This document shows, piece by piece, positions 10,001 through 44,513 of a DNA stretch of 64,000 nucleotides. The first letter of the stretch is position 1. Each line of letters starts with the position of its first letter. This DNA comes from Macrostomum lignano (taxonomy: Eukaryota): the NCBI GenBank assembly GCA_002269645.1, contig NIVC01000440.1:474447-538446 (forward strand), given 5' to 3'. The position numbers and the translations under genes are program-made. The notes under the pieces were generated by a model. It did not search any database. It saw nothing but the letters and a program-made list of their open reading frames with translations, and had not been told where the DNA came from.

Positions 10001-10721
10001 GCCTAGTCTAGAAGGTTGTTTTTATGCCAGAAAATTTTAAACAAAAGTAAAACAAAGAAGAATAGTTTTTAGCAAAAATAGTTACTTTAAAGTTTAGTGA
10101 AACTCTTATAATTTTTAAAGAATATTTTCTGTAAAAATTATAGTGATCAAGCTACTTTACACTTAAAGTACAACTTTCTAGTTTACGTTGGCATAAGAAT
10201 TGAAAAACTAGAAATTTCATTTTTAGTGCATGGGCCTGCCATGATCTGCTTTTGCTTTATGAATTTTTTACAGCTGGTGTGCACACTTGCGTGCTGCTCC
10301 AAAAACATGCGTGTGCGTTTTCCTACCCCCAACGGCCCAAGCAAGAATTCCATCCTGGAGCCAAAATAAGAATAAGATGTTATTCTTCTTTAAACTTCTA
10401 GCATGCACTATAGTTAAATTTGGGCTGTTAAAAGCCCATTACTTAATATGATCTTAAGTTTGGAAGCAATAGAGGTTAGGCTAATAATAATGTACAAACT
10501 TCAAAACTAAGCTGAAAACTAATAAAAAACATTAAAGTTAAATTTTATCACAACATTGTCAACAATATTTAAACAGTAAATTCAAATAAAAACATCCATA
10601 CCTCTCCATTTGTTTGGTTTACACCGAGGTAGATTTCTCCAAATGAACCACTTCCAATTTTCTTAATAAGACGATATTTTTGATTAACAATAAATTCCTT
10701 GCTGTTTGCACTACTTGCCAT
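1031..10721 (-). CDS. CSNK1A1: Casein kinase I alpha, 6 coding exons, 316 aa
   Basis: Exons 10602-10721, 2848-2954, 2520-2745, 2278-2348, 2012-2159 and 1031-1309 join in phase with GT-AG junctions. The translation runs [33 protein letters not shown]...HPQLLYESK...[12 protein letters not shown]...DFGLAKKY...[17 protein letters not shown]...[10 protein letters not shown]. The N-terminus matches the alpha isoform. Confidence 0.95.
1345..1982. repeat. 19-bp minisatellite filling CK1 intron 5
   Basis: The unit TTGGGTCAACCTTGAGTGT grades into GTCAACCTGGGATGCTGGT along the array. Confidence 0.9.
3445..3610. repeat. Imperfect ~160-bp palindrome (MITE-like) centred on GTCACGTGAC
   Basis: The left arm GCCATTTC..CAACACACACATGTAAGTTGCTATTGG mirrors the right arm CCAATAGCGACTTACATGTGTGTGTTGCC..GAAATGGC. 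CACGTG lies at 3527-3532. Confidence 0.7.
4327..5646 (+). mobile_element. Mariner (DD34D) DNA transposon, 1320 bp, defective
   Basis: 26-bp TIRs CAAGGGGTGATCAAAAAGTTCTGCAA with 1 mismatch, and a TA duplication at 4325-4326 and 5647-5648. Confidence 0.95.
4510..5573 (+). pseudogene. Mariner transposase, frameshifted
   Basis: Motifs RSGRP, WVPH, ITGGECW (first catalytic D changed to G), LHHDNA and [10 protein letters not shown] are split over different reading frames. Confidence 0.92.
6342..7821 (+). pseudogene. Chapaev3-type transposase with stops and an internal deletion
   Basis: FCYIC...[16 protein letters not shown]...CYFC...W.ICVDFKMV...KMHFLFSH...SDEQGERF. In-frame stops occur near 6460 and 6732. 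QQSGF is joined out of frame to ALDKDG near 7316, deleting the segment normally between them. Confidence 0.85.
8135..8919. mobile_element. 785-bp non-autonomous element nested in the right end of the Chapaev3-like element
   Basis: 17-bp TIR GGCTCATT(C/T)CATATAAG with AGCT duplicated on both sides (8131-8134, 8920-8923). Removing it restores the host subterminal repeat. It carries four GTTACGACC motifs. Confidence 0.85.
9757..10358. mobile_element. 602-bp non-autonomous DNA transposon with 8-bp TSD (hAT/P-like)
   Basis: Perfect 18-bp TIR CCAGGATGGAATTCTTGC, with AGCCAAAA duplicated at 9749-9756 and 10359-10366. Confidence 0.88.
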
Positions 10722-13004
10722 TCTGAAGTGAAAGCACACAAAGTAAATTGAATAAAACTACCTAGTAACTCAGCAAGCTACTTGAATTCTAGAAAAAATA
10801 CAGAAAGACAACGAAATATTGCAAAAAACAGCTTTAGGTTTCTAAACAGGAAACTTTTTTTAAACTAACAAGGAAGAAGATCAGCTGACTACCAAACGGA
10901 CAGGAAAGGGTGTTTACGTCTTTCTAAGAAATTTGTGCTTAGCAAATTGTGAGTGGGCTTATTAAATTGGAAATATTCCTAAGATACAGTCAGCGTACAC
11001 CAGCTCTAAGTTAAAAGTAATTTTCTTTGTATTCATAAAAAACTTTTACAATTTGTATGCTCTAAAAACAATCAAGGGTTTTTTAAGTAAAACGTGTGAA
11101 ACTTTTTGACATCATTTGTTTTAAAATCAATCGTAAATTCCTAAATATAACTCGCTAAAATTTTAAATGCATAAATGCATTTTTTCATTTCAAATTTTAA
11201 TTATTTAGAATTAACACTCGTGCATACAATTGTGTGTACTTAGGTTTTAAAGCTACCTGTTCCAGTAAAGTACTTACTAAGTTACTACTGGATCCAAAAT
11301 AGTTCTAAATTTCATGATTTATAGTCTCCTACGAGTCCCGTGATTGCTATATCTGCAATTGTAACATGCAGTGTATGTAGTCCCCCCTGATCAATATCGT
11401 TTATATCCGCCGTAAGCGTAACCCGCCCGAAGCGGGATCCGCCACAATAGCACCCAAATACACAGAATCCGCCTAGCCCGCATTACATGTACATGATGGC
11501 TCAACAAAAACATGTGTACAGTATGAACATGTAATCTATAATCTGTAGACATACAGTGTATTACAGAATCCACCGGCCTATGATTACCCGCGGTTGGTTC
11601 CGTACCCATGCTAGTTGCAGATTGATGCACAATGTAAGCTTCGCATACTACTTGTTTCAGTAAATTTTATAGTGACAGCCAGACCAAATTTGACGCGATC
11701 GATCTTCACATGTTCACAAAACTCGATCGTTCTCTGTTGCGCACACCCGATTGTGACTAATTCAGTCACTTTTTACATAGAATTCAAAACTAATGCCACA
11801 CGCAAAAACAGCGAGTAGTGCGAGAGCGAGGAGAGCCGCAGTCAATCAAAACACAAGTACGGGGAAGACAAACGACAAGGAAAGGGGAAGGGAGGCCTTA
11901 AGTCTAAATTTATACAGTCAGCCAGTCGCCAAAGTGCACCCGGTCGTGTGCACAGCTGCAACCTAAAAAACGCAAATTCCACCTGAATCACAATTCACAC
12001 CAATAGAGAATCCACCCGCGAATACCGAATTTGCCTACACTATTTTATACACAGCGATAGCGATTAGAAAGGTCGGGGGTTCGATTCTTAACCCACACAG
12101 AACAAATTGCAGGTTTTGAGCAAGCCACTAAGCTTGAGGATTAAGGACCTTAAGGACCACTGTATAGTAGTCGTATATTTCGTATAACAGGCCGTAAAAC
12201 TCAAAGATCGTGTATTTTTGGAGGCCAATTTCTTAGAAAGAATGCCCCAGGGAGAAAGGAAGAATTCTTTTTTTTCATCACAACTATAGAGAACATAACA
12301 GAGTGACATGCTGTGCATGTTACATATAAATTAAAAGAATAATAATCTTCACTGCCTCAGATCAAATGCAATCTTTGATTGTGGGATGAAAAAAATATTT
12401 TTTCTATCTCCGCAGTGTATTTTTCCCAGGAATTTTAGTTTTACGTCCTGTTATATACTACAGTGGTCCTTGACTTTAGCTCTGAATTGCTTCAGTTCCC
12501 AGCTGTAAAATGGGTGCCAGCATTAGCTGGGGTAATTGATGAGTAACTGAACAGCCGTACGCAGCCTTCAGATGCGGCTGAGCTGTCGGTTGCACCTGTG
12601 CCCATTAGGGCAGGGTATACATGTAATAAATTATTCATAATTATTATGGAATCAAACCATTCAAAGCATTATGGGATATGTGAAGCTTTTTTAATTAACT
12701 CACAGGTTAGCGGGCGTCTATAATATTGTTTTAATTATAATTAATTGAGCAAATTGAACTCAAGGGACCAAAGAGTTCTACTAAAATTGATTGCGCGTCA
12801 GTAAATTTCATGCTGGTCAGATTAATTAGATACAAACACTGGCCAATCAGCAGCCTTCCCAATCCCAAGGATTCCCAAGGATTTAACTATCATTAATGGC
12901 TACCCTCGCCGTTAAATTAATTCCATAAAAAGTCAAACCCTCTTAAAACCCTATTAAAACAGTTTAAAAAAATAATAATTAATATATTATCGAATCTGGT
13001 TTCC

Positions 13005-16000
13005 ATGGCAACCAAAGAAGAAGATGACGAGTCGCTGATGCGGCAGTTCTGCGGTTACACTACCGCGCACGGGCTCGGCCGCTTCGGGGCCCAGACTGGC
13101 GCCATCGGCCGCGGCCTGTGGATCTGCTTCCTGCTGGGCACCTACGGCGGCTTCACTTTCCACATGTACAGCCTCGGCCAGCAGTTCGCCGCGGTGCCTC
13201 TGAGAACCAGTCTGAGCACTTCGTTGCCGTTCGAGTTTCCCGACGTGTACTTTTGCCCGACCGATTTGGTTACTATGAGTCGGGCAAGTCCGCAGGTGAG
13301 GCGCTCTGAGGATCGAGGTTGCTATGACAATTTATGCACTGATGTATTTCAACTGTACGTGTACACAGTAGTTTACAGTAACTGAAGTTCTTGCTGGTGC
13401 CCCTTCTGGCTGGCGCCATTGCTGCAGGCGTAGCGCCATATTTTACAACATTCCAGGTGAACATCAAAGAGCTGACCAGGGCCCTGACCTGCGACACCGA
13501 CTGCAAGAAGCAGCTGAAATTCGACATCCATTGGAGCCCAGAATCCGGCACGACTAGCGCTGCCCAGTATGGACCGGCTGCCCAGGGGCTGCTGCACGTG
13601 ATCTCGGCAGTTGAGAGCAACATCTCGCAGTCCTTGCACTATGGAAAGAACAGTGAGGAACCTGCGATTCTGTGATGCTTTTGGCCATGGTGCTGGCGCC
13701 CCTGGTGCTGGCGCCCCTGGTGCTGGCGCCCCTGGTGCTGGCGCCCCTGGTGCTGGCGCCCCTGGTGCTGGCGCCCCTGGGGCTAAAGCCCTTTGTGCAT
13801 GCATATAAGACAGATAGAGGATAGACAAATAATAAGGCAACAATCATTTCATAAAATGTGATTAAATTGTGTCAAGTAGGAATAAAAAATAAACCACAGT
13901 ATATTGCCCAGGATCCCACTATGTACTTCTTAGACACGCGGTAGTAGCAACGTTCTAGTATTACTTAGTTATTTTCACTTGCGGTTATTTTAGCCTCTGT
14001 CAGCACCTGCCGTACAACACTTGGCGGAGAAGAGTACATAGGAAACTTGTCCATCGTACATCTGTTCGGCACCGCCCAGGTCAGGGAACCAGTGTCCGAC
14101 ATCAATAATCTGCCAAAAATTGCTCCCTACTTGTCCACCGCTAACTGCATCGGCTGGAATTCTGCGGCCAGGGAGCTTCAGGCCGCTGGGGTGCCGCTGG
14201 CAGCTCAAATCTTGGCCATGGGCTACTCCGAGGACGACAGCAAGTGCAGGCAGCCCCGCGGTTTGCCACTGAAGAGTTTTCAAGATAATTCCACTCGTGA
14301 GTGAGCCTTTTTCAGCCTGTAAAAATAACTGAGATTGCGATTAATAGCCTATGCTTTAGGATTGCATGTTTTTGTGAGGGTGCAGGCTAGGAAAGATATT
14401 TGTCGTCAATGTACACTCATTGGGGATACAGAAATTGAGGTTTGTGCGCTGGAGAATGAGTCACCAATGTACACTCATTGGGGGTAGAGAAATTGAGGTT
14501 TGTGCGCTGGAGAATGAGTCACCAGTGTACACTCATTGAGGGTAGAGAAATTAAAGCTTGTGAGTCACCATAGAGAATGATTCACCATATTCCAGACCAG
14601 ATGCACCTGTACGTTGGCTGTCTGGATAAAAATGCGAGTGCAGCGGACTTTCCGCACCTGTGCCTGCAAGATCCATACGGTTGGATGAATCACGAGCGCT
14701 GCGCGGAGTGCTGCTACGTGGCCAATTACACCTACATGGCTCTGCACGGTGACCAGTGCCTCTGCGGTGAAGAGGTCAGCAATGTCACCGCGCTGTCCCT
14801 TAGCGACTTCGCTTGCAGCCGGAAGTGCCGGGGAAATATCGCCGAAGCCTGCGGCGGAGACGCTGCCGCGATTGTCTATCAAGTTCGGAGCTCAGGTGCG
14901 ATTTGGCGGTTTAATGCGAGTGGGCTGATCAGTATGTTGGGTGAATGGAAGAGAGTGAATGTTCATGAGTTCTGTAATGAGTTCATGGGTGAGTTCATGG
15001 GTGAGTTCATGAGTGAGTACATGAGTGAGTTCATGCGTGAGTTATTGAGCCAAAAAAACACACCAAAGCCTCCAACCCGATTCGGGCAGGTTCCAACCCG
15101 CTGTTCATTCCTTTCCGAGCTTCAATCGACAGTTTCAACGAAGGCCCTTACTGCTTCTATAGAGGCAACAGCGGACAGCTGTCAGCCACCTACTGCAACG
15201 TACCGTTCTGTCGTAAGCCTTTACTAGCTACTGTAGTAGATTGTATCACACTGTAGTAGACTGTATCACACTGTAGTAGACTACATCGCACTGTAGTAGA
15301 CTGTATCGCACTGTAGTAGACTGTATCGCAAAGAATACGTTGTATTTCGACTAAAATTAAATTTCATTTTTTTGTTAATCTTTCACCAGCGATCTCGCCC
15401 GGGTTTGACTGTTTGGCATTAAATAGCGAGGACCAGGTGAGCAGCGGGGAGTACCTGCGCTACACTGGCTACAAGAGCCTCACCAACACCAAGGACTCCT
15501 GCATTGACTGGACTGCGATGCGACAGGCGCTTCTTAACGGCTCTCGGACCTTCCGCTTCGATGCTGAACCCTCCATCCTGACTGGTGAGCGCTGGTAGAC
15601 CTTCAATGCATTCCACTGCACCGCCGTGTTAGACTTCCTGACACATCTTTTAATTAGTTCAGATATCCTGAAGCACCCCGAATTCTGGAATACTGACACA
15701 TACTGTGACTGTCTGACACACAGCTGCCATTCTGTGACTGACACACAGCTGTCATCCCGTGACTGTCTGACACACAGGTGTCATCCCGTGACTGTCTGAC
15801 ACACAGCTGTCATCCCGTGACTGTTTGACACACAGCTGTCATCCCGTGACTGTCTGACACACAGCTGTCATCCCCTGACTGTCTGACACACAGCTGTCAT
15901 CCCGTGACTGTTTGACACACAGCTGTCATCCCGTGACTGTCTGACACACAGCTGTCATCCCATAACTGTCTGACACACAGCTGTCATCCCGTGACTGTCT

Positions 16001-19000
16001 GACATACGCCCCCCTTCCAGTCAATATCCTTGATGTGTACATCGAAACCCCGGACTTCGAGCTGTACAACTACGTATCGCGCCGGGTCTGCCGGGTTTTC
16101 AGATGTTTTGACGCAAAAAACGCAAATTATACTACTATCTGAAAATGAAGTAAGTAGTATACGAAAACGCTATCCTAAGCGTGATATATGGCAATATGTA
16201 GTCGTAATAATCCATGTGCTCATATATGTACATTAATTCCATGTACATTAATCCCTATCTATCTCAAATTGGATATGTACATTAATTCCATGTACATTAA
16301 TCCCTATCCCAAATTGTCTATCCCCAATTCTATATGTACACTCACATTAATCTACAGTGTCATCCCCAGACGGTCTGAGCGCGCACCAAAATTACATGTA
16401 CAATACTACATGTACGCAGAGGCGAGAATTACTAATCTCATCTACTACCAAATGAGTCAACTAACAGTGTAGCGTACATCATGTATAAGTATTTACAATG
16501 AAGATATATTTACATTTAATCAGTAGCATATTACAGGAATCGAGACATGTACACCATCACCAGCAAATAGAATATACAGAAAATTTTACATTGTTTTTCA
16601 ATAATTTTCTCTTCATAAATGATTTTAAACCTCTCCCAAGTCTGCCCCCCAAATGCAGGACTGTGTTGAAGCAGTGCTTTATATTTCTATTGACAGTGGG
16701 TATGATACAAGAAGCTTCGTCGCGCTTTAATTACAGTAAACCATCCCCTCGAAGCTCCTATACTGAATGCTGAATCACCCTTTAACTCGGACCATAGTCA
16801 AATTCAACCCTGTTCGAAAACAGCCACCCCTCCGATGTTCACCAGACTCGTCTTCACAGCGCAGACCCCATAGCAAAATCGAGCTAAATTTTAACACTCG
16901 CCCCTGTTCTCTCTGTCCCCCTTCTAAATGCCAAGGAATTTCGACCCTCTCTTCATTTTCAGTGTACAGACAGATCTTTCCACAGCACAGACCATATATT
17001 AAACTTCAAAACCCCTCTCTTCTCCGATTACGTCATCCATGCCGCCCCAGATAGCAAGAAACCAACTTTTAATGCACACATCAACCCCCGCGAGCAAATC
17101 CGAGTCCGCCAACCTCTACCTGCATTGACAAACCCCAGCTGCATTTGTAAATGTACACAGCCTATGAATCAGTGTCTCCACCGCATGCAATTCTGATTTA
17201 CTTGATCTAAACTTTGTAAGTAGTATAAGTCACCCTTGCGTTTACTAGAAGTAGTGAAGTCCACAAATTTAAATACGTGAGGCTATTCAATTCTGCCTCT
17301 CCGCCTCCCCTACCTTCTCACTTCAAGCTTTCAGACTTGGTCTTTGAGACGGTCGGTTTAATCTGTTAGAAGCAGGAATGAATCATGCACTGACCTCTCC
17401 ATACAAAGTAAAGTTGGAATTTCAGACAAGAAATTTGGTTATTTTAAAAGCTAAATGACTAGAAATGCACATTTTTTCATTAAAATGCAGCTTTTTACAG
17501 TTTTTTTACGATTTTAACCTTAAAATGCAGACTTTGTTGATCAAAATCAGTAGTTTCATCACTAGAAACCATACTTTCAACAGCTAATTTGTCCAAATGT
17601 CGCTTTCAACTTGACCTTAGACAGCTTTTAAGCAGGAATGAACCCCACACAAACATCCACAAGCCAGCCCAAAATCAGCCAAAGACATGGCTATTGAAGC
17701 CTAAATTGCTAGAAATGCACATTTTTTCAGAAGAAAATACAATTTTTCACAGTTTTTATGCATTTTTTACGTTAAAATGCAGACTTTATTGATCAAAATC
17801 AGTAGTTTCATCACTAGAAACCATACTTTCAACAGCTAATTTGTCCAAATGTCGCTTTCAACTTGACCTTAGACAGCTTTTAAGCAGGAATGAACCCCAC
17901 ACAAACATCCACAAGCCAGCCCAAAATCAGCCAAAGACATGGCTATTGAAGCCTAAATTGCTAGAAATCATGTCCTGTGTTACGACACTGCCTAGCAACC
18001 GTATAATTTTATTAATACATGAACTAGCACTCCTATTTTACATTCATTGAGAGGCGGCGGCAGCGGGTGGAGGGTGGCCAGACCGTGACTGTGCGCAGCA
18101 CAGTCCCTGTCTCTACTGCCGCCTCCGCCCGCTGCCGCCGCCTCTCAATGAATGTAAAATAGGAGTGCTAGTTCATGTATTAATAAAATTATACGGTTGC
18201 TAGGCAGTGTCGTAACACAGGACATGCGTTTTTCTGTAAAGTAATAATAACCCCACCATTAATATAGACAGTTGGTCGTGTAAACGAATAATTTGAAAGT
18301 TTAGTCTATGTTTTACAAAATGTCTCTATGAAAACTCATCTTCCTACTGACAGTAGAGTTTGCAAAAATCAGTTCTTGGAAGAATGCGACATTTTCGTGA
18401 AAATATTTAAACTGCTATATTGGGCCTATGACAGATTTTTATTGAGAAACTATCGTCATTTCCACAGAGAAAGATAAACATGTGAAGCTTTCGTGAAGAT
18501 TACATCTTCATACTACGGGTGTCAAATTTTCCTGTATTTGACTGAACGTACGTGCATTTAGTCATAGTCGGGGGAGTACTTCAACCATTTCTCAGGTTTA
18601 AATCGGCTGCCGCTTGCATATGTACATCACATGTAAATGAACATGTGGTAAATCTGATGAGGAACTATGCATACATGCGCGAGTTGCCCGGAAAGAGCTG
18701 AGATTGATAGATAATGAAAAATCAGTAGGAAAGAGAGAATGAGGCTGCGTGACCACCCACCCCATTATCCTGTCTTTCCGTTGCATGGCAGCACGTAATT
18801 AAATGTGTCAAGTGTACAATTGATTCAATCGATTACTCGTTTATACGCAAAGTATCGAGAGAGTTTTTAATTGCATCCAAACTTTCTGACTAATGCATTC
18901 GTGTGTTCCAAAGAAGGAGACACTGATTCATAGGGTGTGTACATTGACAAATGCAATTACAGCACACATGGTAGGGTTGGCTTTGGTAGACGCGCGGATT

Positions 19001-22000
19001 TGCTTGGTTCGCATTGTTCATATATGTGCATCGAAATTTTTTTCTTGCTAACTGCTTCTATGGGGATGTATAGATGATGACGTAATCAGAGATAGGGCTT
19101 TGGTTGGGGGAGGCTGGGTCCGTGCTGTGAAAAGATCTGCTTGCTTCGTCAAAATGTACATTGGGATTGAGAGAGAGGCCGGTCGAATTTCGTTGACAAC
19201 TAGAAATGGAAAGGTTTGGTCAGAGAATAGGGGTGTATGTGTGTTTTGGCTTTATTCAAAATGGTCTGTGCTGCGAAGACGAGTCCATTGACCATTGGGT
19301 GTTTGCTGTTTTGCCAATTCAGTATACTGAACCTGTTAAACTGATTGCCTCATGAGTCACTTTTCTGGGGTATGTGTAGGAGAGAGAGGCCTGAGAGAGA
19401 CAAGGGCTCGATTTGGGTGGGTCCTCTGGCTCCATTCGTATTGGCCAATTTGGCGAATTGGCAAATCTACTTGCATGGGTTAAATTATTGAATATGGTCA
19501 GAGTTGAAGAATTTGGGGATGAATCAAGATGTAAAGTTGGCAAAAACAACACTGATTCACCACATCTAAAAGATGACTGCTAGGAGCTTCGGAAATAAGA
19601 CTACTGTACACAGCAGCATCAACAAAAGGTATTAAATTGTCAATCAAAATCGACCCGTAGATGTGCGATTTTGCATGGTTTACAGTGTTCATATGTGCAT
19701 CGAAAAATTTTGTTTCTTGCTAACTGCTCCTATGGGGGAGGTGGATGACGTAATCAAGATAGGGTTTTGGTTGGAGGAGGCTCAATATATGAGTCTGTGC
19801 TGTGAAAATATCTGTTTATACACTGAAATTGGAGAGGGAGGGTCGGAATTCCTTGACAGTTAGAAATGGTAAGGTCAGAGAGACAGGGACGAGTGGTTCT
19901 GTTCTACATGGGTCTGTGCTGTGAAGACGAGTCTAATATGACCATTGGGTGTTGGGTGTTTTGCCAATTCCGTAATACACTAAACCTGTCCAGCTGATTG
20001 CCGCATGAGTCACTTTTCTCGGTGGGTGCAGAAGGAGAGAGAGAGAGGTCTGGGAGGGACAGTTTAAATGTCAATCGAAATCAACGGGCCGCTTCGCCGA
20101 CTGTATATGTTAAAATTATTATAGCTAGGTTTATAGCAAACTGTGCGTTTTAACCCAATATTCAAGAATAATCCCTTCCCTGACTTCTTGAGGGGTATTT
20201 CATGTACCAAATACATACATTTGAATGATGAAACAGCATTTTTGACGATTAAGTTGTAAAAATTATGGTTTCTGCTGATGAAGTGATTAATTTTGTTCAA
20301 TAAAGTCAGCATTTTAACGTTAAAAAGAGTAAAAACTGTGAAAAATTGACAAGCTTTAAACCAAAATGCGCAAATTTCTAGTAATTTAGCTTTCAATGAA
20401 AATGTCTTGGGTGGAATTCCAACTTGGGCCGGGGTGTGCATATGGAGATCAGTGTGTGACTCATTCCTGCTCGAAAGCTGTCTCTTGCCAACTTTGAAAT
20501 CAGCATTTGGACAAATTAGCGGTTGAAATTATGGCTTTTGGGATGAAACTACTAAGTTTGATCAATTCGCATTTCGCATTTTAACGTTAGAAAATAATAA
20601 AACTGTGAAAATTGGCCTTTATTAAACGAAAGAATGAGAAATTCTATGAATAGCTTTAAAAAAACGATGGCTTTAGTGGAAATTGGACTGGCTCGGGTAA
20701 TCCGTGTGCGATTATAATTCCTGCTCAAAGCTGTCTCAGAGTTCCAGAAGTAGCATTTGTGATAATTTTGTGTTAAAATTGTGGTTTTTAGTGATGAAAC
20801 TACTGATTTTGATCAATAAAGTCTGCATTTTAACGTAAAAAATGCGTAAAACTGTGAAAATTTGTATTTTCTTATGAAAAAATGCTGATTTCTAGCAATT
20901 TAGGCTTCAATAGCCATGTCTTTGGTTGATTCTGGGGTGGCTTGTGGATGTTCGTGGGGGTTCATTCCTGCTTCAAAGCTGTCTAAGGTCAAGTTGAAAG
21001 CGACATTTGGACAAATTAGTTGTTGAAAGTATGGTTTCTAGTGATGAAACTACTGATTTTGATCAATATAGTCTGCATTTTAACGTAAAAAATGCATAAA
21101 AACTGTGAAAAATTGTATTTTCTTCTGAAAAAATGTGCATTTCTAGCAATTTAGGCTTCAATAGCCATGTCTTTGGCTGATTTTGGGCTGGCTTGTGGAT
21201 GTTTGTGTGGGGTTCATTCCTGCTTAAAAGCTGTCTAAGGTCAAGTTGAAAGCGACATTTGGACAAATTAGCTGTTGAAAGTATGGTTTCTAGTGATGAA
21301 ACTACTGATTTTGATCAACAAAGTCTGCATTTTAAGGTTAAAATCGTAAAAAAACTGTAAAAAGCTGCATTTTAATGAAAAAATGTGCATTTCTAGTCAT
21401 TTAGCTTTTAAAATAACCAAATTTCTTGTCTGAAATTCCAACTTTACTTTGTATGGAGAGGTCAGTGCATGATTCATTCCTGCTTCTAACAGATTAAACC
21501 GACCGTCTCAAAGACCAAGTCTGAAAGCTTGAAGTGAGAAGGTAGGGGAGGCGGAGAGGCAGAATTGAATAGCCTCACGTATTTAAATTTGTGGACTTCA
21601 CTACTTCTAGTAAACGCAAGGGTGACTTATACTACTTACAAAGTTTAGATCAAGTAAATCAGAATTGCATGCGGTGGAGACACTGATTCATAGGCTGTGT
21701 ACATTTACAAATGCAGCTGGGGTTTGTCAATGCAGGTAGAGGTTGGCGGACTCGGATTTGCTCGCGGGGGTTGATGTGTGCATTAAAAGTTGGTTTCTTG
21801 CTATCTGGGGCGGCATGGATGACGTAATCGGAGAAGAGAGGGGTTTTGAAGTTTAATATATGGTCTGTGCTGTGGAAAGATCTGTCTGTACACTGAAAAT
21901 GAAGAGAGGGTCGAAATTCCTTGGCATTTAGAAGGGGGACAGAGAGAACAGGGGCGAGTGTTAAAATTTAGCTCGATTTTGCTATGGGGTCTGCGCTGTG

Positions 22001-25000
22001 AAGACGAGTCTGGTGAACATCGGAGGGGTGGCTGTTTTCGAACAGGGTTGAATTTGACTATGGTCCGAGTTAAAGGGTGATTCAGCATTCAGTATAGGAG
22101 CTTCGAGGGGATGGTTTACTGTAATTAAAGCGCGACGAAGCTTCTTGTATCATACCCACTGTCAATAGAAATATAAAGCACTGCTTCAACACAGTCCTGC
22201 ATTTGGGGGGCAGACTTGGGAGAGGTTTAAAATCATTTATGAAGAGAAAATTATTGAAAAACAATGTAAAATTTTCTGTATATTCTATTTGCTGGTGATG
22301 GTGTACATGTCTCGATTCCTGTAATATGCTACTGATTAAATGTAAATATATCTTCATTGTAAATACTTATACATGATGTACGCTACACTGTTAGTTGACT
22401 CATTTGGTAGTAGATGAGATTAGTAATTCTCGCCTCTGCGTACATGTAGTATTGTACATGTAATTTTGGTGCGCGCTCAGACCGTCTGGGGATGATACTG
22501 TAGATTAATGTGAGTGTACATATAGAATTGGGGATAGACAATTTGGGATAGGGATTAATGTACATGGAATTAATGTACATATCCAATTTGAGATAGATAG
22601 GGATTAATGTACATGGAATTAATGTACATATATGAGCACATGGATTATTACGACTACATATTGCCATATATCACGCTTAGGATAGCGTTTTCGTATACTA
22701 CTTACTTCATTTTCAGATAGTAGTATAATTTGCGTTTTTTGCGTCAAAACATCTGAAAACCCGGCGGATTTGGCGCGATACGTAGTTGTACACCAATGGC
22801 AGGAAGGCGAACAATTTCTGTCGAGCGGCCAGGGTTCTTCTGGATGCAGCGGTAACCGAGCAGAAGACCGGCCGACATTACTTCATGTAAGCGAGCTTTT
22901 AGATATAACATCTGTAATCGTCAACGAAGTATATTATTCTATAGACTGCGCAATGCAAGGACCCTATGCAGTACACAGTATTCTATGGACTGGACAATGC
23001 AATTTACCCAGTACATAGTATTTTATTAACTGGACAATGCAATTAAAAACTTAAATACTTGAAAACCAAATCCAAACCACTACCAATAGAAAAGTCATCT
23101 TTGAGTTTATATAGTTCATAAAGTTGTACAGAAAAATAACAAATAATTTTGCGCTAACTTTTTCAGCCGGACAACTATAGTGGACACCGCTAAACCAGTC
23201 TGTCCGATTTCAATCACCAATGACGAGATACTACTCAGCTCATGCAGCATCGATGCCTGCTGTGAGTAGTATCGCGCTCTACATAAACCAAAAATATGTA
23301 AAGCGTCCTCCAGAATGTTTTCCCTGTTCTCCAGAAATTAAATATTCTCGAACACCCAGTCTAGCCTCCTAGTCTCGGAGATCTGCAAGGACAATGCAAG
23401 GACTCCAGTACTGTACATAGTATTCTATAGACTGGACAATGCAATTTTCCCAGTCTCGGACACTCGGAAGGTCTCGGACACCTAGTGTCGGATCCACCAA
23501 ATCTCGGATACTCAGTCTTGGACACCCAGTCTCGGACACACCAAGTCTCGGACACACCCAGTCTCGGACACACCCATTCTCGGACACAAACCGCAGCCCG
23601 CAAGACGAAGAGCATCCCGGGCCTGGTTCGGGACCGCATCGGCAGCGCCCTGCTGGCCAGCCGGTTCAGCAGCAGCATGGGCATCGGCTTCACGGGCTGC
23701 ACCTTTGGCGAGCATCTGTGCACTATCGACGACTTCACGACGGTGTTCCATCCGGAATTCGGCGTCTGCCACCGGTTCAACCAGGAGAAATGGGTGCAGC
23801 AGAGCAAGGACGTGAAGGCGACAGATTCCACGCTGACTGTGAGCTACTTCACGGATGCCACGGACTCTCTGGGACAGCAGCTGCCGGGAATTGACCGAAT
23901 GTCCCGGGTGGTCTTCCCAGGCGTTGAAAATCCCAATGACGACAGTTTCAGCGCAATGCAGGTAACAGACGTTCTGTTAAACACCTGTTAGACACCTGTT
24001 AGACAATATCAGCACATGTTAGACAATATCAGCACCTGTTAAACAATATCAGCACCTGTTAGACACAATATCAGTACCTGTTAGGCAATATCAGCACGTG
24101 TTAGACAATTTCAGCACCTGTTAGACACAATATCAGCATTTGTTAGACACAGTATCAGCACCTGTTAGACACAGTATCAGCGCCTGTTAGACACAGTATA
24201 AACACCTGCTAGACAATATCAGCACCTGTCTGTAATCCACCAAAATCCAATGCACAGGTGGTAGTTGTTCCAGTCGGCCAATTTCCCTGGCGAGACAAGG
24301 CCCTGACAGCCAGCCCTGGCCAGCACCTGGAGCTGCGAATGCGCTACGACAAAGTGAACCGGTTCTCAAAGCCCCCGGATCAGGCCTGCAATCAGAGTAA
24401 GAATGACGTCACCTACCGGCTGCCGTCTTGGCAGTCAAGCTGGCGTTACACGCCGCAGGCTTTGTAAGCTATTTCTGAAGATTTTGCGAATATTTCGTTT
24501 AGCCTACTACTAGTAGTTTCAATTATTAGTAGCATTTATATCCGATTATTTAACCTTTGATTTTTAGGCAATCAGTGAATATTACCGAGCTGAAAAACAC
24601 GGCGGATTGGGCGAAAAAGACAAAAATTCTTGAAAGCATCCTGATGAGCCTGAATGCCAGCATGTAAGCTTGCCTGTAGAATGACGCCACTTTACGTGTA
24701 GAATGACGCCAATTACGTATCTTTAGAATGATACCAATTACCAGTAGAATAATACCAATTACATGTAGAATGATACCAATTACCTGTAGAATAATACCAA
24801 TTACCTGTAGAATGATACCAATTACCTGTAGAATGATACCAATTACCTGTAGAATGATACCAATTACCTGTAGAATGATGCAAATTACCTGTAGAATGAT
24901 ACCAATTACCTGTAGAATGATACCAATTACCTGTAGAATGATGCAAATTACCTGTAGAATGATACCAATTACCTGTAGAATGATACCAATTACCTGTAGA

Positions 25001-28000
25001 ATGATACCAATTACCTGTAGAATAATACCAATTACCTGTAGAATAATACCAATTACCTGTAGAATGATACCAATTACCTGTAGAATAATACCAATTACCT
25101 GTAGAATAATACCAATTACCTGTAGAATGATACCAATTACCTGTAGAATGATACCAATTACCTGTAGAATAATACCAATTACCTGTAGAATAATACCAAT
25201 TACCTGTAGAATAATACCAATTACCTGTAGAATGATACCAATTACCTGTAGAATAATACCAATTACCTGTAGAATGATACCAATTACCTGTAGAATAATA
25301 CCAATTACCTGTAGAATGATACCAATTACCTGTAGAATTATTCCAATTACCTGTAGAATGATACCAATTACCTGTATAATAATACCAATTACCTGTAGAA
25401 TAATACCAATTACCTGTAGAATGATACCAATTACCTGTAGAATGATACCAATTACCTGTAGAATGATGCAAATTACCTGTAGAATGATACCAATTACCTG
25501 TAAAATGACGGCAATTACAAGTAGAAGACGCCAATTACCTGTAAAATGACGGCAATTACAAGTAGAAGACGCCAATTACCTGTAAAATGACGGCAATTAC
25601 AAGTAGAAGACGCCAATTACCTGTAAAATGACGGCAATTACAAGTAGAAGACGCCAATTACCTGTAAAATGACGGCAATTACAAGTAGAAGACGCCAATT
25701 ACCTGTAAAATGACGGCAATTACAAGTAGAAGACGCCAATTACCTGTAAAATGATGGCAATTACAAGTAGAAGACGCCAATTACCTGTAAAATGATGGCA
25801 ATTACAAGTAGAAGACGCCAATTACCTGTAAAATGACGGCAATTACAAGTAGAAGACGCCAATTACCTGTAAAATGACGGCAATTACAAGTAGAAGACGC
25901 CAATTACCTGTAAAATGACGGCAATTACAAGTAGAAGACGCCAATTACCTGTAAAATGACGGCAATTACAAGTAGAAGACGCCAATTACCTGTAAAATGA
26001 CGGCAATTACAAGAAGAAGACGCCAATTACCTGTAAAATGACGGCAATTACAAGTAGAAGACGCCAATTACCTGTAAAATGACGGCAATTACAAGTAGAA
26101 GACGCCAATTACCTGTAAAATGACGGCAATTACAAGTAGAAGACGCCAATTACCTGTAAAATGACGGCAATTACAAGTAGAAGACGCAAATTACCTGTAA
26201 AATGATGGCAATTACAAGTAGAAGACGCCAATTACCTGTAAAATGACGGCAATTACAAGTAGAAGACGCCAATTACCTGTAAAATGACGGCAATTACAAG
26301 TAGAAGACGCCAATTACCTGTAAAATGACGGCAATTACAAGTAGAAGACGCCAATTACCTGTAAAATGATGGCAATTACAAGTAGAAGACGCCAATTACC
26401 TGTAAAATGACGGCAATTACAAGTAGAAGACGCCAATTACCTGTAAAATGACGGCAATTACAAGTAGAAGACGCCAATTACCTGTAAAATGATGGCAATT
26501 ACAAGTAGAAGACGCCAATTACCTGTAAAATGACGGCAATTACAAGTAGAAGACGCCAATTACCTGCATAAAGTGACGGCAAACTTACAGATATCACTGC
26601 ACAAAAACTGCATACTGAAGCAATGGCATCGCACCCCCCACCAAATGATTGATTGCAGCAGCGAAATGAATCAGACAATTCATTTCTCGAGAGCCACCAG
26701 GCGCGACTGCGTGAACACCTATGCGGTGCACAAATTCATCCGGCACTGCGGGTGCCTGCCCTCCTTCCTGCCCATACCAGTGGAATTCTTTCCAACTTAT
26801 AACTACTGCTTCGATGACAAGACGGATCTACTCAGCATTGAGAGCACTGAGGCCTGCTACATGCGGCTCATGGCTTCAATCTCCCGCTACGAGATGGAGG
26901 CCAGGCAGCTCTGTCTGGACATGTGCGAGCGGAGGTCGTACGCCATCAGACCCGTCACTTATCCTTGGCCAGGCCTCACTATTGACTCCGCTACGGACTT
27001 TCTGCACAATAGCCTGGGCGATTGGTCCTATCCCTACAATTTCCTATTCTCCAAGGGCGTAGCCAATCTGTTCTACATGGACATCAGGACCAAGGAGGTT
27101 CAGGCTAGACGGTCCAATTTATCAGCTAACGAGATGCTGGAGTTTACAAACGAGCTCCAGAATGTGGAGCGAAGTTTGGCTAAGATCTCCATTCAGGCTT
27201 TGAGCGACTTTGGTCAAGAGATGACCGAGGAGCCGTCCTATACTACTAAGAACTTGATGGCCGATCTTGGCGGTGAGTATGAAAGCTGGCCTGCTCGCGG
27301 TCACGTGATGTTTTTTTGCGCAACAAGTTATGATACTGTGAGGTTTAAATACAGAGAGTGGTGTGGGGCTATATGGTGAGGAGTAAAAACAGGGATGTGG
27401 GGGGGGGGGTTAGAGGATGAAGAGGTAGAAAAACAGCGCAGCGAGTGGTTGGGGCTATGGGAAAAAGAGGGTAGAAAAACAGGGAGTGGGGTGGGGCTAT
27501 GGGCTGACGGGGGTAGAAAAACACAGGGCGGCAGGGAGTGGGGTGGGGCTATGGGCTGAGGGGGTAGAAAAACACAGGGCGGCAGGGAGTGAGGTGGGGC
27601 TATGGGCTGAGGGGATAAAAAACACAGAGTGGCAGGGAGTGGAGTGGGGCTATGGGCTGAGGGGGGTAGAAAAACACAGAGTGGCAGGGAGTGGAGTACG
27701 TGGGGCTATGGGCTGAGGGGGGTAGAAAAACACAGGGTGGCAGGGAGTGGGGTGGGCTATGGGCTGAGGGGATAGAAAAACACAGAGTGGCAGGGAGTGG
27801 AGTGGGGCTATGGGCTGAGGGGATAGAAAAACACAGAGTGGCAGGGAGTGGAGTGGGGCTATGGGCTGAGGGGGGTAGAAAAACACAGGGTGGTAGGGAG
27901 TGGGGTGGGCTATGGGCTGAGGGGATAGAAAAACACAGAGTGGCAGGGAGTGGAGTGGGGCTATGGGCTGAGGGGGGTAGAAAAACACAGGGTGGCAGGG

Positions 28001-28413
28001 AGTGGGGTGGGCTATGGGCTGAGGGGATAGAAAAACACAGAGTGGCAGGGAGTGGAGTGGGGCTATGGGCTGAAGGGGGTGGAAAAACACAGGGCAACAG
28101 GCGATAGAGTGTGCTAGTGGAGAGGCTTGAAAGGGTGCTAGACTATATGCAACAAAAAACTAAGCGAACACCCTACCCAGGCGCACTGGGCCTCTGGTCG
28201 GGCATCTCAGTGCTGACCGTGTGCGAGCTGATCGAGCTGCTTGTCTACGCCATTTTGACTGCGCGTCAGCGAATCGCGGCTAAGAAGCGAATCTCCCAGG
28301 AGGCGGCGCACAGGGCGGAGGTCGCGGCTGGCAAACCGGAGCCGTCGCGGTCGCCTGTGCACGGCGAAGAGTTTGAAATTTCTCAGCTAAAAAATGAAAA
28401 CGAATCGGGTTAA
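13005..28413 (+). CDS. DEG/ENaC family cation channel with kringle-like, WSC and kringle modules; 965 aa when the exon-6 insertion is removed
   Basis: Exons 13005-13295, 13457-13652, 13994-14296, 14596-14895, 15390-15584, 16021-16066+22791-22886, 23167-23261, 23597-23961, 24258-24463, 26701-27272 and 28181-28413 total 2898 nt with all phases consistent. Motifs: TTAHG, TM1, FPDVYFC, CTFGEHLC..DF...PEFGVCHRFN, a Cys-rich thumb, and LMADLGGALGLWSGISVLT (TM2 with GxS filter). Confidence 0.92.
13688..13778. repeat. 15-bp minisatellite, 6 copies
   Basis: TGGTGCTGGCGCCCC repeats in DEG/ENaC intron 2. Confidence 0.9.
15227..15330. repeat. 20-bp minisatellite
   Basis: About 5 copies of CTGTAGTAGACTGTATCGCA in intron 4. 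Confidence 0.85.
15700..16005. repeat. 29-bp minisatellite
   Basis: GTGACTGTCTGACACACAGCTGTCATCCC repeats in intron 5, ending about 15 nt before the acceptor. Confidence 0.9.
16067..22788. mobile_element. 6.7-kb non-autonomous foldback-type DNA transposon inserted in DEG/ENaC exon 6
   Basis: The arms mirror about coordinate sum 38855 and are near-identical from 16067 to ~17785 versus ~21070 to 22788. Termini are CAACTACGTATCGCGCC. The target is the palindrome TGTACA (TA duplication; GTAC or TGTACA are equally compatible). The exon frame resumes after removal. No transposase ORF was seen. Confidence 0.9.
17973..18222. mobile_element. 250-bp hairpin MITE nested in the foldback element
   Basis: About 100-bp arms (TCCTGTGTTACGACA...) with one mismatch seen, CATG on both flanks, and a short loop. 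Confidence 0.85.
23985..24230. repeat. 20-22-bp minisatellite
   Basis: TTAGACAATATCAGCACCTG variants in intron 8. Confidence 0.85.
24715..26567. repeat. Compound array: 21-bp monomers (~24715-25500), then 41-bp dimers (~25500-26567)
   Basis: CCAATTACCTGTAGAATGATA repeats are followed by CCAATTACCTGTAAAATGACG+GCAATTACAAGTAGAAGACG repeats. The array fills most of intron 9. Confidence 0.95.
27475..28090. repeat. ~52-bp G-rich minisatellite
   Basis: GGGTAGAAAAACACAGAGTGGCAGGGAGTGGAGTGGGGCTATGGGCTGAGG units in intron 10. Confidence 0.9.
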
Positions 28414-28949: not shown

Positions 28950-30270
28950 CCGATGACACCCCGATACCAATCCTGACACCCTGATACCAATCCTGACACC
29001 CCGATACCAATCCTGACACCCTGATACCAATCCTGACACCCCGATACCAATCCTGACACCCCGATACCAATCCTGACACCCCGATACCAATCCTGACACC
29101 CCGATACCAATCCTGACACCCCGATACCAATCCTGACACCCCGATACTATACCGGACACCCCGATACCAATCCTGACACCCCAACACCAATCCTGACACC
29201 CCGATACCAATCCTGACACCCCGATACCAATCCTGACACCCCGATACCAATCCTGACACCCCGATACCAATCCTGACACCCTGATAACAATCCTGACACC
29301 CCCGATACTATACCTGACACCCCGATACCAATCCTGACACCCCGATACCAATCCTGACACCCCGATACCAATCCTGACACCCTGATACTATACCGGACAC
29401 CACGATACCAATCCTGACACCCCAACACCAATCCTGACACCCTGATACCAATCCTGACACCCCGATACCAATCCTGACACCCCGATACTATACCTGACAC
29501 CCCGATACCAATCCTGACACCCCGATACTATACCTGACACCTGATACCAATCTTGAAACCCCGATACTATACCTGACACCCTGATACCAATCCTGACACC
29601 CCAATACCAAGCCTGACACCCCAATACCAAGCCTGACACTCCAATACCAAGCCTGACACTCAAATACCAAGCCTGACACCCCAATACCAAGCCTGAAACT
29701 TCAATACCAATCTTGACACCCCAATACCAAGCCTGACACCCTAATACCAAGCCTGACACCCCAATACCAAGCCTGACACTCCAATACCAAGCCTGACACT
29801 CAAATACCAAGCCTGACACCCCGATACCAATCCTGACACCCCGATACCAATCCTGACACCCCGATACTATACCTGACACCCCGATACCAATCCTGACACC
29901 CCGATACTATACCTGACACCCCGATACCAATCCTGACACCCCGATACCAATCCTGACACCCCGATACCAATCCTGACACCCCGATACCAATCCTGACACC
30001 CCGATACTATACCTGACACCCCAATACAAAGCCTGACCCCCGATACTAATCCTGACACCCTGATACAAATCCTGACACCCTGATACAAATCCTGACACCC
30101 TGATACCAATCCTGACACCCTGATACAAATCCTGACACCCTGATACCAATCCTGACACCCCAAAACCAATCTTGACATCCCAATACCAAGCCTGACACTC
30201 CAATAAGCCTGACACCCCGATACCAATCCTGACACCCTAATACCAATCCTGACACCCCGAAACCAACCAA
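28950..30270. repeat. 20-bp minisatellite, ~65 copies
   Basis: CCGATACCAATCCTGACACC repeats in the intergenic region. Confidence 0.95.

Positions 30271-33221: not shown

Positions 33222-44513
<11,292 letters not shown>

What the first reader, a model, noticed from the sequence alone, without database searches (positions are those of the whole stretch)
13994..23261. DEG/ENaC channel with kringle-like, WSC and kringle modules shuffled into its finger domain
Seen in sequence: about 345 aa of extra exons lie between the FPDVYFC and CTF..C..DF motifs. Exon 4 is a clear WSC pattern (YVGC...M.HERCAECC..Y.YMALHG.QC.CG...C.RKC.G...ACGG...VY). Exons 5-7 give a six-Cys kringle pattern (C..Y.G.KS.T...C.DW..NNFCRA..C..C..C). 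Exon 3 is a three-Cys truncated kringle (C..EY.G.LS..C.GW..CRQP). Each module is bounded by phase-1 introns (13652/13994, 14296/14596, 14895/15390, 23261/23597). Established: phase 1-1 symmetry marks shuffled extracellular modules, a kringle-WSC tandem occurs in Kremen receptors, and the finger is the variable gating region of DEG/ENaCs. The HG, DEG-site Ala and GxS motifs are intact. Inference: a receptor-channel chimera gated by a protein, glycan or matrix ligand. I do not know of this architecture being described.
Basis: partly seen in the sequence, partly recalled or inferred. Interest (0 to 1): 0.87.

Follow-up and report, generated by a model that had tools for sequence, protein, structure and literature searches.

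The report
Flatworm sodium channel with WSC-kringle insert
This is a gene of the flatworm Macrostomum lignano for a DEG/ENaC-type sodium channel that carries a 386-residue cysteine-rich insert in its outer "finger" region: a sugar-binding-type WSC domain nested inside one kringle-like module, followed by a second kringle-like module. The layout is found only in a small family in this species, has not been studied, and the copy in this window has a transposon inside one coding exon.

Summary
The window is Macrostomum lignano contig NIVC01000440.1. The gene at 13005-28413 (+) is PAA82974.1 (BOX15_Mlig007204g1, 1052 aa), which UniProt auto-names "WSC domain-containing protein".

**Confirmed**
- The protein is a DEG/ENaC channel: Pfam ASC E 6.6e-38, with the HG motif, Deg-site Ala972 and GIS filter present.
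- A 386-aa insert (aa 163-548) lies in the finger, bounded by phase-1 introns at 13652/13994 and 23261/23597.
- Exon 4 is a true WSC domain (above the Pfam cut-off; hits to Wsc1 and Kremen1).

**Corrected**
- Exon 3 is the N-half of a full kringle-like module. Its C-half is the missed exon after the WSC exon, so WSC is nested inside kringle 1.
- Both kringle-like modules fail the Pfam cut-off, and AlphaFold models do not look like kringles. They do match a kringle profile (hhalign 93%, E about 2e-7).
- The "7-kb intron" is a 6720-bp foldback transposon inside a coding exon. It is absent from the near-identical second copy.

**Status**
- The architecture is shared by at least five diverged M. 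lignano paralog lineages with conserved intron phases. It was found in no other species and no paper.
- Gating through the insert is inference only.

The parts
13005..28413 (+). Whole gene: BOX15_Mlig007204g1 / PAA82974.1, a DEG/ENaC subunit of 1052 aa
   Evidence: The exon chain translates exactly to P0001. The window gene is identical to L001 10001-25409 of NIVC01000440.1.
13005..13295 (+). Exon 1: N-terminus, HG motif (TAHGLG), TM1, post-TM1 FPDVYFC
   Evidence: Pfam ASC. Aligns to FaNaC residues 66-156.
13457..13652 (+). Exon 2: proximal finger segment; ends in phase 1
13994..14296 (+). Exon 3 (phase 1-1): N-terminal half of kringle-like unit 1 (Cys1-Cys3; GGEEYIGNLS, CIGWNS, KCRQP)
   Evidence: Its cysteines are invariant in all five paralog rows of alignment A3.
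14596..14895 (+). Exon 4 (phase 1-1): WSC domain with 10 Cys
   Evidence: Pfam WSC 45.9 bits on the exon alone, cut-off 27.8. PDB profile hits Wsc1 7pz2 at 1.5e-9 and Kremen1 at 8.7e-9. Foldseek hits 7pz2.
15090..15212 (+).
   Evidence: Needed to reproduce P0001. Aligns to the kringle C-terminus of Kremen1, plasminogen and neurotrypsin. hhalign result.
15390..15584 (+). Exon 5 (phase 1-1): start of kringle-like unit 2 (Cys1, RYTG...C.DW)
16021..16067 (+).
   Evidence: It is contiguous with the right part in the duplicate locus L002 13804-13945.
16068..22791 (.). 6720-bp foldback-type transposon (16068-22787) plus the second copy of the GTAC target duplication (22788-22791). Arms of 1836 nt are about 100% complementary. 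No long ORF.
   Evidence: Absent from L002. The gap boundaries are not GT-AG. No paralog has an intron here.
22792..22886 (+). Right part of the same exon (TNGRKANNFCRAARVLLD...; Cys3 of unit 2)
23167..23261 (+). Exon 7: end of kringle-like unit 2 (PVC...SSCSIDAC; Cys4-Cys6); ends in phase 1
23597..23961 (+). Channel resumes: distal finger / beta-ball with CTFGEHLCTIDDF and GVCHRFN
   Evidence: Aligns to FaNaC 196-240.
24258..24463 (+). Channel exon (palm/beta-ball region)
24568..24663 (+). Small phase 2-2 channel exon
   Evidence: Its intron positions are conserved in paralogs.
26659..27272 (+). Large channel exon (Cys-rich thumb, palm) up to the Deg-site Ala972 in LMADLGG
28181..28413 (+). 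Last exon: TM2 with GLWSGISVLTVCELIELL (GIS filter), C-terminus and stop

Best explanation
**What it is**
- The gene encodes a subunit of a trimeric DEG/ENaC-type cation channel of Macrostomum lignano.
- Its finger domain is the outer, mobile corner of the extracellular domain. In relatives this corner binds agonists or is cut by proteases.
- The finger has acquired a 386-residue disulfide-rich block with 22 Cys and 6 N-glycosylation sequons.
- The block is a derived kringle with a WSC (lectin-type) domain nested in its Cys3-Cys4 loop, followed by a second derived kringle.

**How it arose**
- The block was assembled from phase-1 exons.
- It is old enough to be shared by at least five paralog lineages that are only 30-35% identical.

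**Most likely mode of action (inferred, not shown)**
- The block is a built-in extracellular binding module.
- It probably holds a glycan or matrix/protein partner through WSC and the kringles.
- Occupancy of that site, or a pull on it, would move the finger helices and so bias opening of the pore. This would work like peptide binding in FaNaC or release of an inhibitory tract in ENaC.

**State of the copy in this window**
- A very recent 6.7-kb foldback transposon sits inside a conserved coding exon of kringle 2.
- This copy is therefore probably impaired. The intact message most likely comes from the 99.5%-identical duplicate on NIVC01002218.1.
For: **Identity**
- The spliced CDS equals PAA82974.1.
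- Pfam ASC E 6.6e-38 and WSC E 8.7e-10 are both above their cut-offs.
- The closest solved structures are FaNaC 2.4e-12, ASIC5 and ENaC, with TM2 nearly identical to FaNaC's ADIGGTLGLWMGISVLT.
- HG, Ala972 and GIS are present.

**Position of the insert**
- It falls between the segments that align to FaNaC 66-156 and 196-240.
- That interval holds the finger helices alpha1-alpha3, which bind FMRFamide and move on gating. The same corner is important for gating across the superfamily (PMC11026163).

**Modules**
- WSC is supported.
- Kringle ancestry: hhalign against a kringle alignment gives 93.4% (E 2.6e-7) for unit 2 and 93.7% (E 2e-7) for exon 3 plus exon 15090-15212.
- Those hhalign scores are 42.7 and 42.9, against a column-shuffle null of mean 10.7, maximum 18.6.
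- The PDB profile search of unit 2 returns mostly kringles; the exceptions are synaptotagmin-1 C2 domains and one Tudor protein at E 0.3-1.4. tPA kringle 2 is best at E 1.5e-3, in three collinear pieces.
- Sub-threshold Pfam Kringle hits appear in 4 of 5 unit-2 sequences and 2 of 5 unit-1 sequences.
- UniProt names one paralog fragment "Kringle domain-containing".
- Units 1 and 2 are related to each other (hhalign E 3e-5).

**Real and selected**
- The same block, with invariant cysteines, occurs in P0008, P0009/P0157, P0010, P0011/P0161, P0007 and P0072, all of them ASC proteins.
- Intron positions and phases are conserved in three lineages.
- The annotation is transcript-derived (PMC5730564).

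**Transposon**
Against: - No functional, expression or binding data exist for any family member.
- Kringle fails Pfam's curated cut-off and the canonical loop lengths.
- The AlphaFold models (pLDDT 57 and 65) are beta-rich. Foldseek finds no kringle.
Only parts of it were checked against HMMER output.
- All insert exons are frame-symmetric, so cassette skipping could yield an ordinary channel. Isoform data were not available.
- In one paralog lineage (P0161/P0011) the WSC part is degenerate and not detected by Pfam. WSC binding therefore cannot be essential for all members.
- The transposon means the copy in this window may make no normal protein.
Confidence: 0.6

Rival explanations
1. The block is an extracellular tether for mechanical gating. 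WSC and the kringles anchor the finger to the glycocalyx or matrix, so that shear or stretch pulls the channel open, as in tethered models of MEC-4 and in yeast Wsc1 mechanosensors. A soluble ligand is not involved.
For: - The closest solved WSC is the "mechanosensor domain of Wsc1".
- The finger is the peripheral, mobile part of the channel.
- DEG/ENaCs include mechanically gated members (PMC11026163 abstract).
Against: - Nothing in the sequence separates tethering from ligand binding.
- WSC is degenerate in the P0161 lineage.
- No expression data place the gene in mechanosensory cells.
Confidence: 0.25
2. The block has no gating role. It would serve assembly, trafficking, clustering or cell-surface adhesion, or act as an alternatively spliced cassette that is usually skipped. 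The conducting channel would then behave like an ordinary FaNaC/ASIC-like DEG/ENaC.
For: - Every insert exon group is frame-symmetric, and joining exon 2 to the exon at 23597 gives an intact 666-aa channel.
- C. elegans EGAS channels, which also carry an extra module, gave no currents in oocytes (PMC10424705).
Against: - The only annotated, transcript-derived isoforms keep the block.
- The block is conserved at 30-35% identity, with invariant Cys, across at least five lineages.
- Its position is in the gating-relevant finger.
Confidence: 0.2
3. Gene-model artefact. A separate Kremen-like gene nested in an intron has been wrongly fused to a channel gene.
For: - Kringle and WSC also occur together in Kremen.
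- Mapping of transcripts from duplicated loci did produce one false "intron" here, the transposon gap.
Against: - The block has no start or stop codon of its own.
- All junctions are canonical and in frame with the channel exons on both sides.
- The same fusion, with the same intron phases, is found at three other loci examined and in further paralogs.
- No CUB domain or separate TM segment is present.
Confidence: 0.03
4. The copy in this window is a dead allele or duplicate. The transposon in the kringle-2 exon abolishes normal mRNA, and PAA82974.1 exists only because transcripts from the intact duplicate were mapped onto this locus.
For: - The gap 16068-22791 has no GT-AG and matches the transposon exactly.
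- The duplicate locus has one uninterrupted exon there.
- The annotation pipeline mapped de novo transcripts at 80% or more identity.
- No paralog has an intron at that point.
Against: - The rest of the ORF is intact. The arms are about 100% identical, so the insertion is very recent.
- Two in-frame canonical rescue paths exist.
  - A GT..AG pair inside the transposon ends would add 4 aa.
  - Donor 15594 to acceptor 22803 would drop 20 conserved residues.
- This rival concerns only this copy, not the family.
Confidence: 0.55

Closest known systems
FMRFamide-gated Na+ channels (FaNaC) and the wider DEG/ENaC superfamily (ASIC, ENaC, BASIC, degenerins)
   Same: - Pfam ASC domain, two TM segments and the HG motif.
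- Cys-rich extracellular domain.
- Small Deg-site residue and a GIS filter identical to FaNaC1's.
- FaNaC is the best PDB match.
   Different: - A 386-aa kringle/WSC/kringle block sits inside the finger.
- No solved or characterised member has a folded accessory domain there.
- Overall similarity to FaNaC is low (49 bits). Three other M. lignano FaNaC-like genes did not respond to FMRFamide-type peptides. This gene was not tested.
[quoted passage not shown]
   Same: DEG/ENaC subunits that have picked up a shuffled extracellular module. They are also uncharacterised and gave no currents in oocytes (PMC10424705).
   Different: The module type differs (EGF against WSC and kringle-like) and so does the lineage. 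The position of the EGF modules relative to the finger was not examined here.
Kremen1/2 ectodomain (Kringle-WSC-CUB)
   Same: Kringle and WSC occur side by side. Kremen1 is among the best PDB matches for both the WSC part and the GPYCFY...C.IP.C piece.
   Different: - Here WSC is nested inside kringle 1 rather than following it.
- A second kringle-like unit follows, and there is no CUB domain.
- The host protein is a channel, not a single-pass Dkk/LRP6 co-receptor.
Finger-domain elaborations of other DEG/ENaCs (ENaC protease-released inhibitory tracts; nematode degenerin extracellular regulatory region)
   Same: The same variable corner of the channel carries lineage-specific extra sequence that controls gating (general statement in PMC11026163; details from background knowledge).
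   Different: Those are short tracts or family-specific Cys-rich stretches. They are not recognisable mobile domains with their own phase 1-1 exons.
Yeast Wsc1 cell-wall mechanosensor and other WSC proteins
   Same: The WSC domain is above the Pfam cut-off. Wsc1 is the best sequence match and the only fold match.
   Different: There is a single WSC embedded in a channel loop. Most of the 511 database hits to the block are WSC-only proteins, many with tandem WSC repeats, from fungi, algae, diplonemids and molluscs.

Membership tests
DEG/ENaC (Pfam ASC, PF00858) | Match to the ASC family model above the curated cut-off | tested here: met
   131.3 bits against a cut-off of 23.6, E 6.6e-38, in 3 stretches interrupted by the insert.
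DEG/ENaC (Pfam ASC, PF00858) | Two hydrophobic TM segments flanking a large Cys-rich extracellular domain, with an HG motif before TM1 | tested here: met
   TAHGLG (H22-G23) and GLWICFLLGTYGGFTFHMYSL in exon 1. GLWSGISVLTVCELIELLVYAIL in the last exon. 36 Cys lie between the two TM segments. No TM predictor was run.
DEG/ENaC (Pfam ASC, PF00858) | Small residue at the Deg position and a G/S-x-S selectivity filter in TM2 | tested here: met
   Ala972 in LMADLGG and G983-I-S. TM2 aligns to FaNaC ADIGGTLGLWMGISVLT. The GIS motif of FaNaC1 is described in PMC11026163.
DEG/ENaC (Pfam ASC, PF00858) | Forms a trimeric, Na+-selective, amiloride-sensitive channel | not testable with these tools
   Needs expression and electrophysiology.
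WSC domain (PF01822) | Match above the curated cut-off with the conserved cysteine framework | tested here: met
   39.1 bits in the whole protein and 45.9 bits on exon 4 alone, against a cut-off of 27.8. 10 Cys. PDB profile hits Wsc1 at 1.5e-9 and Kremen1 at 8.7e-9.
WSC domain (PF01822) | WSC (PAN/apple-like) fold | tested here: inconclusive
   In the low-confidence AlphaFold model (mean pLDDT 56.7), Wsc1 7pz2 ranks first and second (E 2.3e-3 and 4.6e-3, TM-score 0.56 on the target); all other listed matches have E 0.03 or weaker.
WSC domain (PF01822) | Carbohydrate binding | not testable with these tools
   Needs a glycan array or pull-down with recombinant domain.
Kringle (PF00051) | Match to the family model above the curated cut-off | tested here: not met
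   Unit 2 scores 12.2 bits (E 0.24) against a cut-off of 34.3. Unit 1 gives no hit for the window protein. The best paralog reaches 22.7 bits.
Kringle (PF00051) | Six Cys in kringle order with the flanking motifs (Y.G..S.T..G..C..W; N[YF]CR; P[WY]C; C.[IV]P.C) | tested here: met
   Present in both units and invariant across paralogs. There are collinear three-piece alignments to tPA kringle 2 and plasminogen.
Kringle (PF00051) | Canonical size (about 80 aa) and the Cys3-Cys4 spacing of the PROSITE-type signature | tested here: not met
   Unit 2 is about 140 aa, with 33 residues between Cys3 and Cys4 plus a long Cys2-Cys3 loop. In unit 1 a whole WSC domain lies between Cys3 and Cys4. The canonical values are from background knowledge.
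Kringle (PF00051) | Profile-level homology to known kringles | tested here: met
   hhalign gives 93.4% (E 2.6e-7) for unit 2 and 93.7% (E 2e-7) for unit 1. The score is about 43 against a shuffled-column maximum of 18.6.
Kringle (PF00051) | Kringle three-dimensional fold | tested here: inconclusive
   The AlphaFold models (pLDDT 57 and 65, alignments of 5-6 sequences) are beta-rich. Foldseek finds no kringle among the listed matches.
Kremen family | Kringle-WSC-CUB ectodomain on a single-pass membrane protein | tested here: not met
   No CUB hit. WSC is nested in the kringle rather than after it. The host is a two-TM channel.

The most novel reading that the evidence does not exclude
A Macrostomum-specific clade of DEG/ENaC channels uses a built-in lectin-type module (WSC nested in a kringle, plus a second kringle) on the finger as its gating sensor. 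Binding of, or tension from, a glycan or matrix partner would open the pore directly. This would be a receptor-channel chimera of a kind not known in this superfamily.
Probability: 0.3. Interest if true: 0.8.

Novelty: new variant of a known kind. Interest (0 to 1): 0.6.

Why it matters
DEG/ENaC channels are opened by very different stimuli: protons, peptides, proteases and force. The variable finger is thought to be where this diversity is encoded.

This is a natural case in which recognisable binding domains have been shuffled into that exact spot and then kept through several rounds of duplication. It offers a direct test of whether the finger can act as a plug-in site for new sensors. It also offers a possible built-in tether for the long-debated tethered model of mechanical gating.

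Macrostomum lignano has RNAi, in situ hybridisation and transgenesis, so the idea can be tested. The nested WSC-in-kringle arrangement is also a clean example of exon insertion into a domain-internal loop.

Tried and rejected
- **Word-indexed protein searches.** Three searches (whole protein, insert, paralog alignment) returned only the protein itself and one fragment. They could not be used to count architectures. The exhaustive representative search was used instead.
- **AlphaFold.** The whole insert and kringle unit 2 alone gave low-to-modest confidence. Foldseek recovered only WSC, so the kringle fold is neither confirmed nor excluded.
- **HMM searches for unit 1.** Pfam and PDB searches on unit 1 alone were not significant.
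- **dN/dS between the two near-identical copies.** There were too few differences to be informative: 5 synonymous and 10 non-synonymous.
- **Literature searches.** Searches for ENaC plus WSC domain, degenerin plus kringle, and the gene identifiers found nothing relevant. The three M. lignano channels tested by Dandamudi et al. are different genes.
I rejected it as the normal form once the database protein, the duplicate locus and the paralogs showed the conserved IETPDF segment.
- **Nested-gene artefact.** Considered and rejected (see rivals).
- **Other copies of the transposon.** No further copy of its termini was found in the window or the fetched loci.
- **tRNA genes.** None were found.

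Full report
**Origin and gene model**

The window is eukaryotic. This is PAA82974.1, BOX15_Mlig007204g1 of Macrostomum lignano, 1052 aa, which UniRef names "WSC domain-containing protein". Its contig, NIVC01000440.1, is identical to the window over the gene.

Fourteen coding pieces reproduce the protein exactly:
- 13005-13295
- 13457-13652
- 13994-14296
- 14596-14895
- 15090-15212
- 15390-15584
- 16021-16067
- 22792-22886
- 23167-23261
- 23597-23961
- 24258-24463
- 24568-24663
- 26659-27272
- 28181-28413

All junctions are GT-AG except the gap between 16067 and 22792. The public annotation of this genome was built from RNA-seq assemblies and de novo transcripts mapped at 80% or more identity (PMC5730564). 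The chaining of the extra exons to the channel exons therefore rests on transcripts, not on ab initio prediction.

Right:
- the channel motifs;
- the start (13994) and end (23261) of the extra coding block;
- three of the four phase-1 junctions;
- the quoted WSC and Cys patterns.

Wrong:
- "14895/15390" hides a 123-nt phase 1-1 exon (15090-15212).
- The long "intron" between 15584 and about 22800 hides a 47-nt coding piece (16021-16067).
- The block is 386 aa (residues 163-548), with 22 Cys and 6 N-x-S/T sequons. It is not about 345 aa.

**The 6.7-kb gap is a transposon, not an intron**

A second locus, NIVC01002218.1, encodes PAA59863.1. It differs at 10 residues and 15 coding nucleotides.

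- There, 16021-16067 and 22792-22886 form one uninterrupted 142-nt exon.
- The window carries an extra 6720 bp at that point, flanked by a GTAC duplication.
- The element's inverted arms are 1836 nt long and about 100% complementary, and it has no long ORF.
- Paralogs at two further loci have no intron at this position, while every other intron position and phase in the block is shared.

The window copy therefore has a very recent foldback-type transposon inside a conserved coding exon. The annotated "intron" is best explained by transcripts of the intact duplicate being mapped onto this locus.

Two canonical in-frame escape routes exist on paper:
- a GT..AG pair inside the element's termini, which would add NYLY;

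Neither route is supported by data.

**Channel part**

- Pfam ASC scores 131 bits against a cut-off of 23.6.
- With the block removed, the best solved relatives are FaNaC (7yvb at 2.4e-12; 8on7 at 8.9e-11), then ASIC5 and ENaC subunits.
- TM2 reads LMADLGGALGLWSGISVLTVCELIELL. It has Ala at the Deg position and the same GIS filter as FaNaC1.
- The segment before the block aligns to FaNaC 66-156 and the segment after it to FaNaC 196-240. The block therefore lies in the finger.
- In FaNaC1 the finger helices alpha1-alpha3 form the peptide pocket and move first on gating. The authors note that this corner matters for gating throughout the superfamily (PMC11026163).
- The exact helix boundaries in the flatworm protein are inferred, not modelled.

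**WSC**

- Exon 4 alone scores 45.9 bits against Pfam WSC, cut-off 27.8.
- A profile of the block from six paralog sequences hits the yeast Wsc1 sensor domain (1.5e-9) and Kremen1 (8.7e-9) in the PDB.
- Wsc1 is the only plausible Foldseek match of the otherwise poor AlphaFold model.

**Kringle-like units**

By curated HMM the answer is negative:
- Unit 2 (exons 15390-23261) scores 12.2 bits against a cut-off of 34.3.
- Unit 1 gives nothing for the window protein.
- The best paralog reaches 22.7 bits.

AlphaFold also gives no support. The whole block (pLDDT 57) and unit 2 alone (pLDDT 65) are modelled as beta-rich, and no kringle appears among the Foldseek matches. The alignments held only 5-6 sequences, so this is weak evidence either way.

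Other evidence is positive:
- Kringle is the only family hit by the unit-1 sequences and the one shared by most unit-2 sequences.
- The unit-2 profile retrieves mostly kringles from the PDB; the exceptions are synaptotagmin-1 C2 domains and one Tudor protein at E 0.3-1.4. tPA kringle 2 leads at 1.5e-3, aligned in three collinear pieces covering Y.G..T..G..C..W, NFCR and P.C...C.I..C.
- UniProt labels one paralog fragment "Kringle domain-containing".
- hhalign against an alignment of 11 classical kringles gives 93.4% (E 2.6e-7) for unit 2, over kringle columns 5-78.
- It gives 93.7% (E 2e-7) for exon 3 joined to exon 15090-15212, over columns 17-78.
- 150 column shuffles of each query gave a mean score of 10.7 and a maximum of 18.6, against about 43 observed.
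Several stretches agree with the HMMER printouts, but this test should be repeated with a curated alignment.
- Units 1 and 2 also match each other (E 3e-5).

My reading is that both units are strongly derived kringles with enlarged Cys2-Cys3 and Cys3-Cys4 loops. Exon 3 is not a truncated kringle. It carries Cys1-3 of unit 1, and the missed exon after WSC carries Cys4-6. The WSC domain is therefore nested in the Cys3-Cys4 loop of unit 1. All four pieces (kringle 1 N-half, WSC, kringle 1 C-half, kringle 2) are bounded by phase-1 introns.

**A family, but only in this species so far**

An exhaustive HMMER scan of 1.84 billion representative proteins with the block gave 511 hits at E 1e-3 or better.

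- Every hit that covers the block end to end is from M. lignano and also has the channel part: P0008, P0009/P0157, P0010, P0011/P0161, P0007 and P0072.
- These are 30-49% identical to the window protein, with invariant Cys, GPYCF, YTG, C..W and N.CR positions.
- All other listed hits are WSC-only proteins, many with tandem WSC repeats, from fungi, algae, diplonemids and molluscs.
- Only the best 150 hits were listed. A distant ASC+WSC protein elsewhere is therefore not excluded, and other Macrostomum species are probably not in the protein library.
- In the P0161/P0011 lineage the WSC part has decayed below Pfam detection.

**Mechanism**

Shown:
- a DEG/ENaC subunit with intact pore motifs;
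- a disulfide-rich, glycosylatable, extracellular block of recognisable binding-domain ancestry inserted in the finger;
- conservation of that block across old duplicates.

Inferred:
- The block binds something. WSC domains are typically carbohydrate-binding, and kringles bind proteins or lysine-type ligands (background knowledge).
- Because it hangs on the part of the channel that moves first in FaNaC gating, occupancy or tension is transmitted to the pore.

I rate ligand or matrix control of gating as the most likely role. A purely mechanical tether is the main variant, and a non-gating accessory or cassette role is the main alternative. A fusion artefact is very unlikely.

**Comparison with known systems and novelty**

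- It is a member of DEG/ENaC, and it contains a true WSC domain.
- It is not a Kremen: there is no CUB domain, and the order of domains and the host protein differ.
- Its two Cys-rich units are kringle-derived but fail the curated kringle definition.
- DEG/ENaCs with an added shuffled module are already named in C. elegans (EGAS, "EGF plus ASC"). The general idea is therefore not new, although those channels are also uncharacterised.
- No paper in the searchable library links ENaC or degenerins with WSC or kringle domains, and none mentions these gene identifiers.
- The proteins sit in GenBank and UniProt with automatic names only.

I class it as a new variant of a known kind. It is interesting for channel evolution and gating, and it can be tested in a tractable animal. 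The function is wholly inferred, the kringle assignment is soft, and this particular copy is interrupted by a transposon.

Noticed in passing
window 16068-22791: A foldback-type transposon with 1836-nt near-perfect inverted arms sits inside a coding exon. Its termini (AACTAC|GTATCG ... CGATACGTAG|TT) contain a GT..AG pair. If used, that pair would splice the element out and leave an in-frame 12-nt scar (NYLY). This is an introner-like property and is untested.
   Followed up: partly
window 13685-13790, 14407-14552, 15705-16004, 23993-24229, 24673-26582, 27480-28092, 28954-30000 and many arrays between 32103 and 57649: Almost every intron of the gene, and much of the rest of the window, is filled with minisatellite arrays. 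Periods are mostly 20-58 bp and arrays run up to 123 copies. Copy number differs between the two duplicate loci.
   Followed up: partly
window gene 13005-28413 against L002 10001-19339: The coding sequence of the two duplicate loci differs at only 15 of 3156 nt (about 0.5%). The aligned introns are about 4-5% diverged. Exons are thus far more similar than introns, even at synonymous sites (dS about 0.007). Possible causes are selection, gene conversion or alignment effects of the repeats.
   Followed up: partly
window 3005-10721 (-) and 34995-38413 (-): The public annotation lists a protein-kinase gene upstream (316 aa, Pkinase) and a 493-aa gene without Pfam hits downstream, both on the opposite strand. 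Neither was examined further.
   Followed up: no
L003 (NIVC01000261.1) gene 2001-11717; proteins P0161/P0011: In one paralog lineage the WSC part of the block has lost several conserved cysteines and is no longer detected by Pfam. The two kringle-like units are retained.
   Followed up: partly
protein P0072 (UniRef A0A1I8HMR1, M. lignano): This paralog model goes from WSC straight into kringle-like unit 2. It lacks the GPYCFY exon and the first part of unit 1. This is either a real variant architecture or an incomplete older gene model.
   Followed up: no
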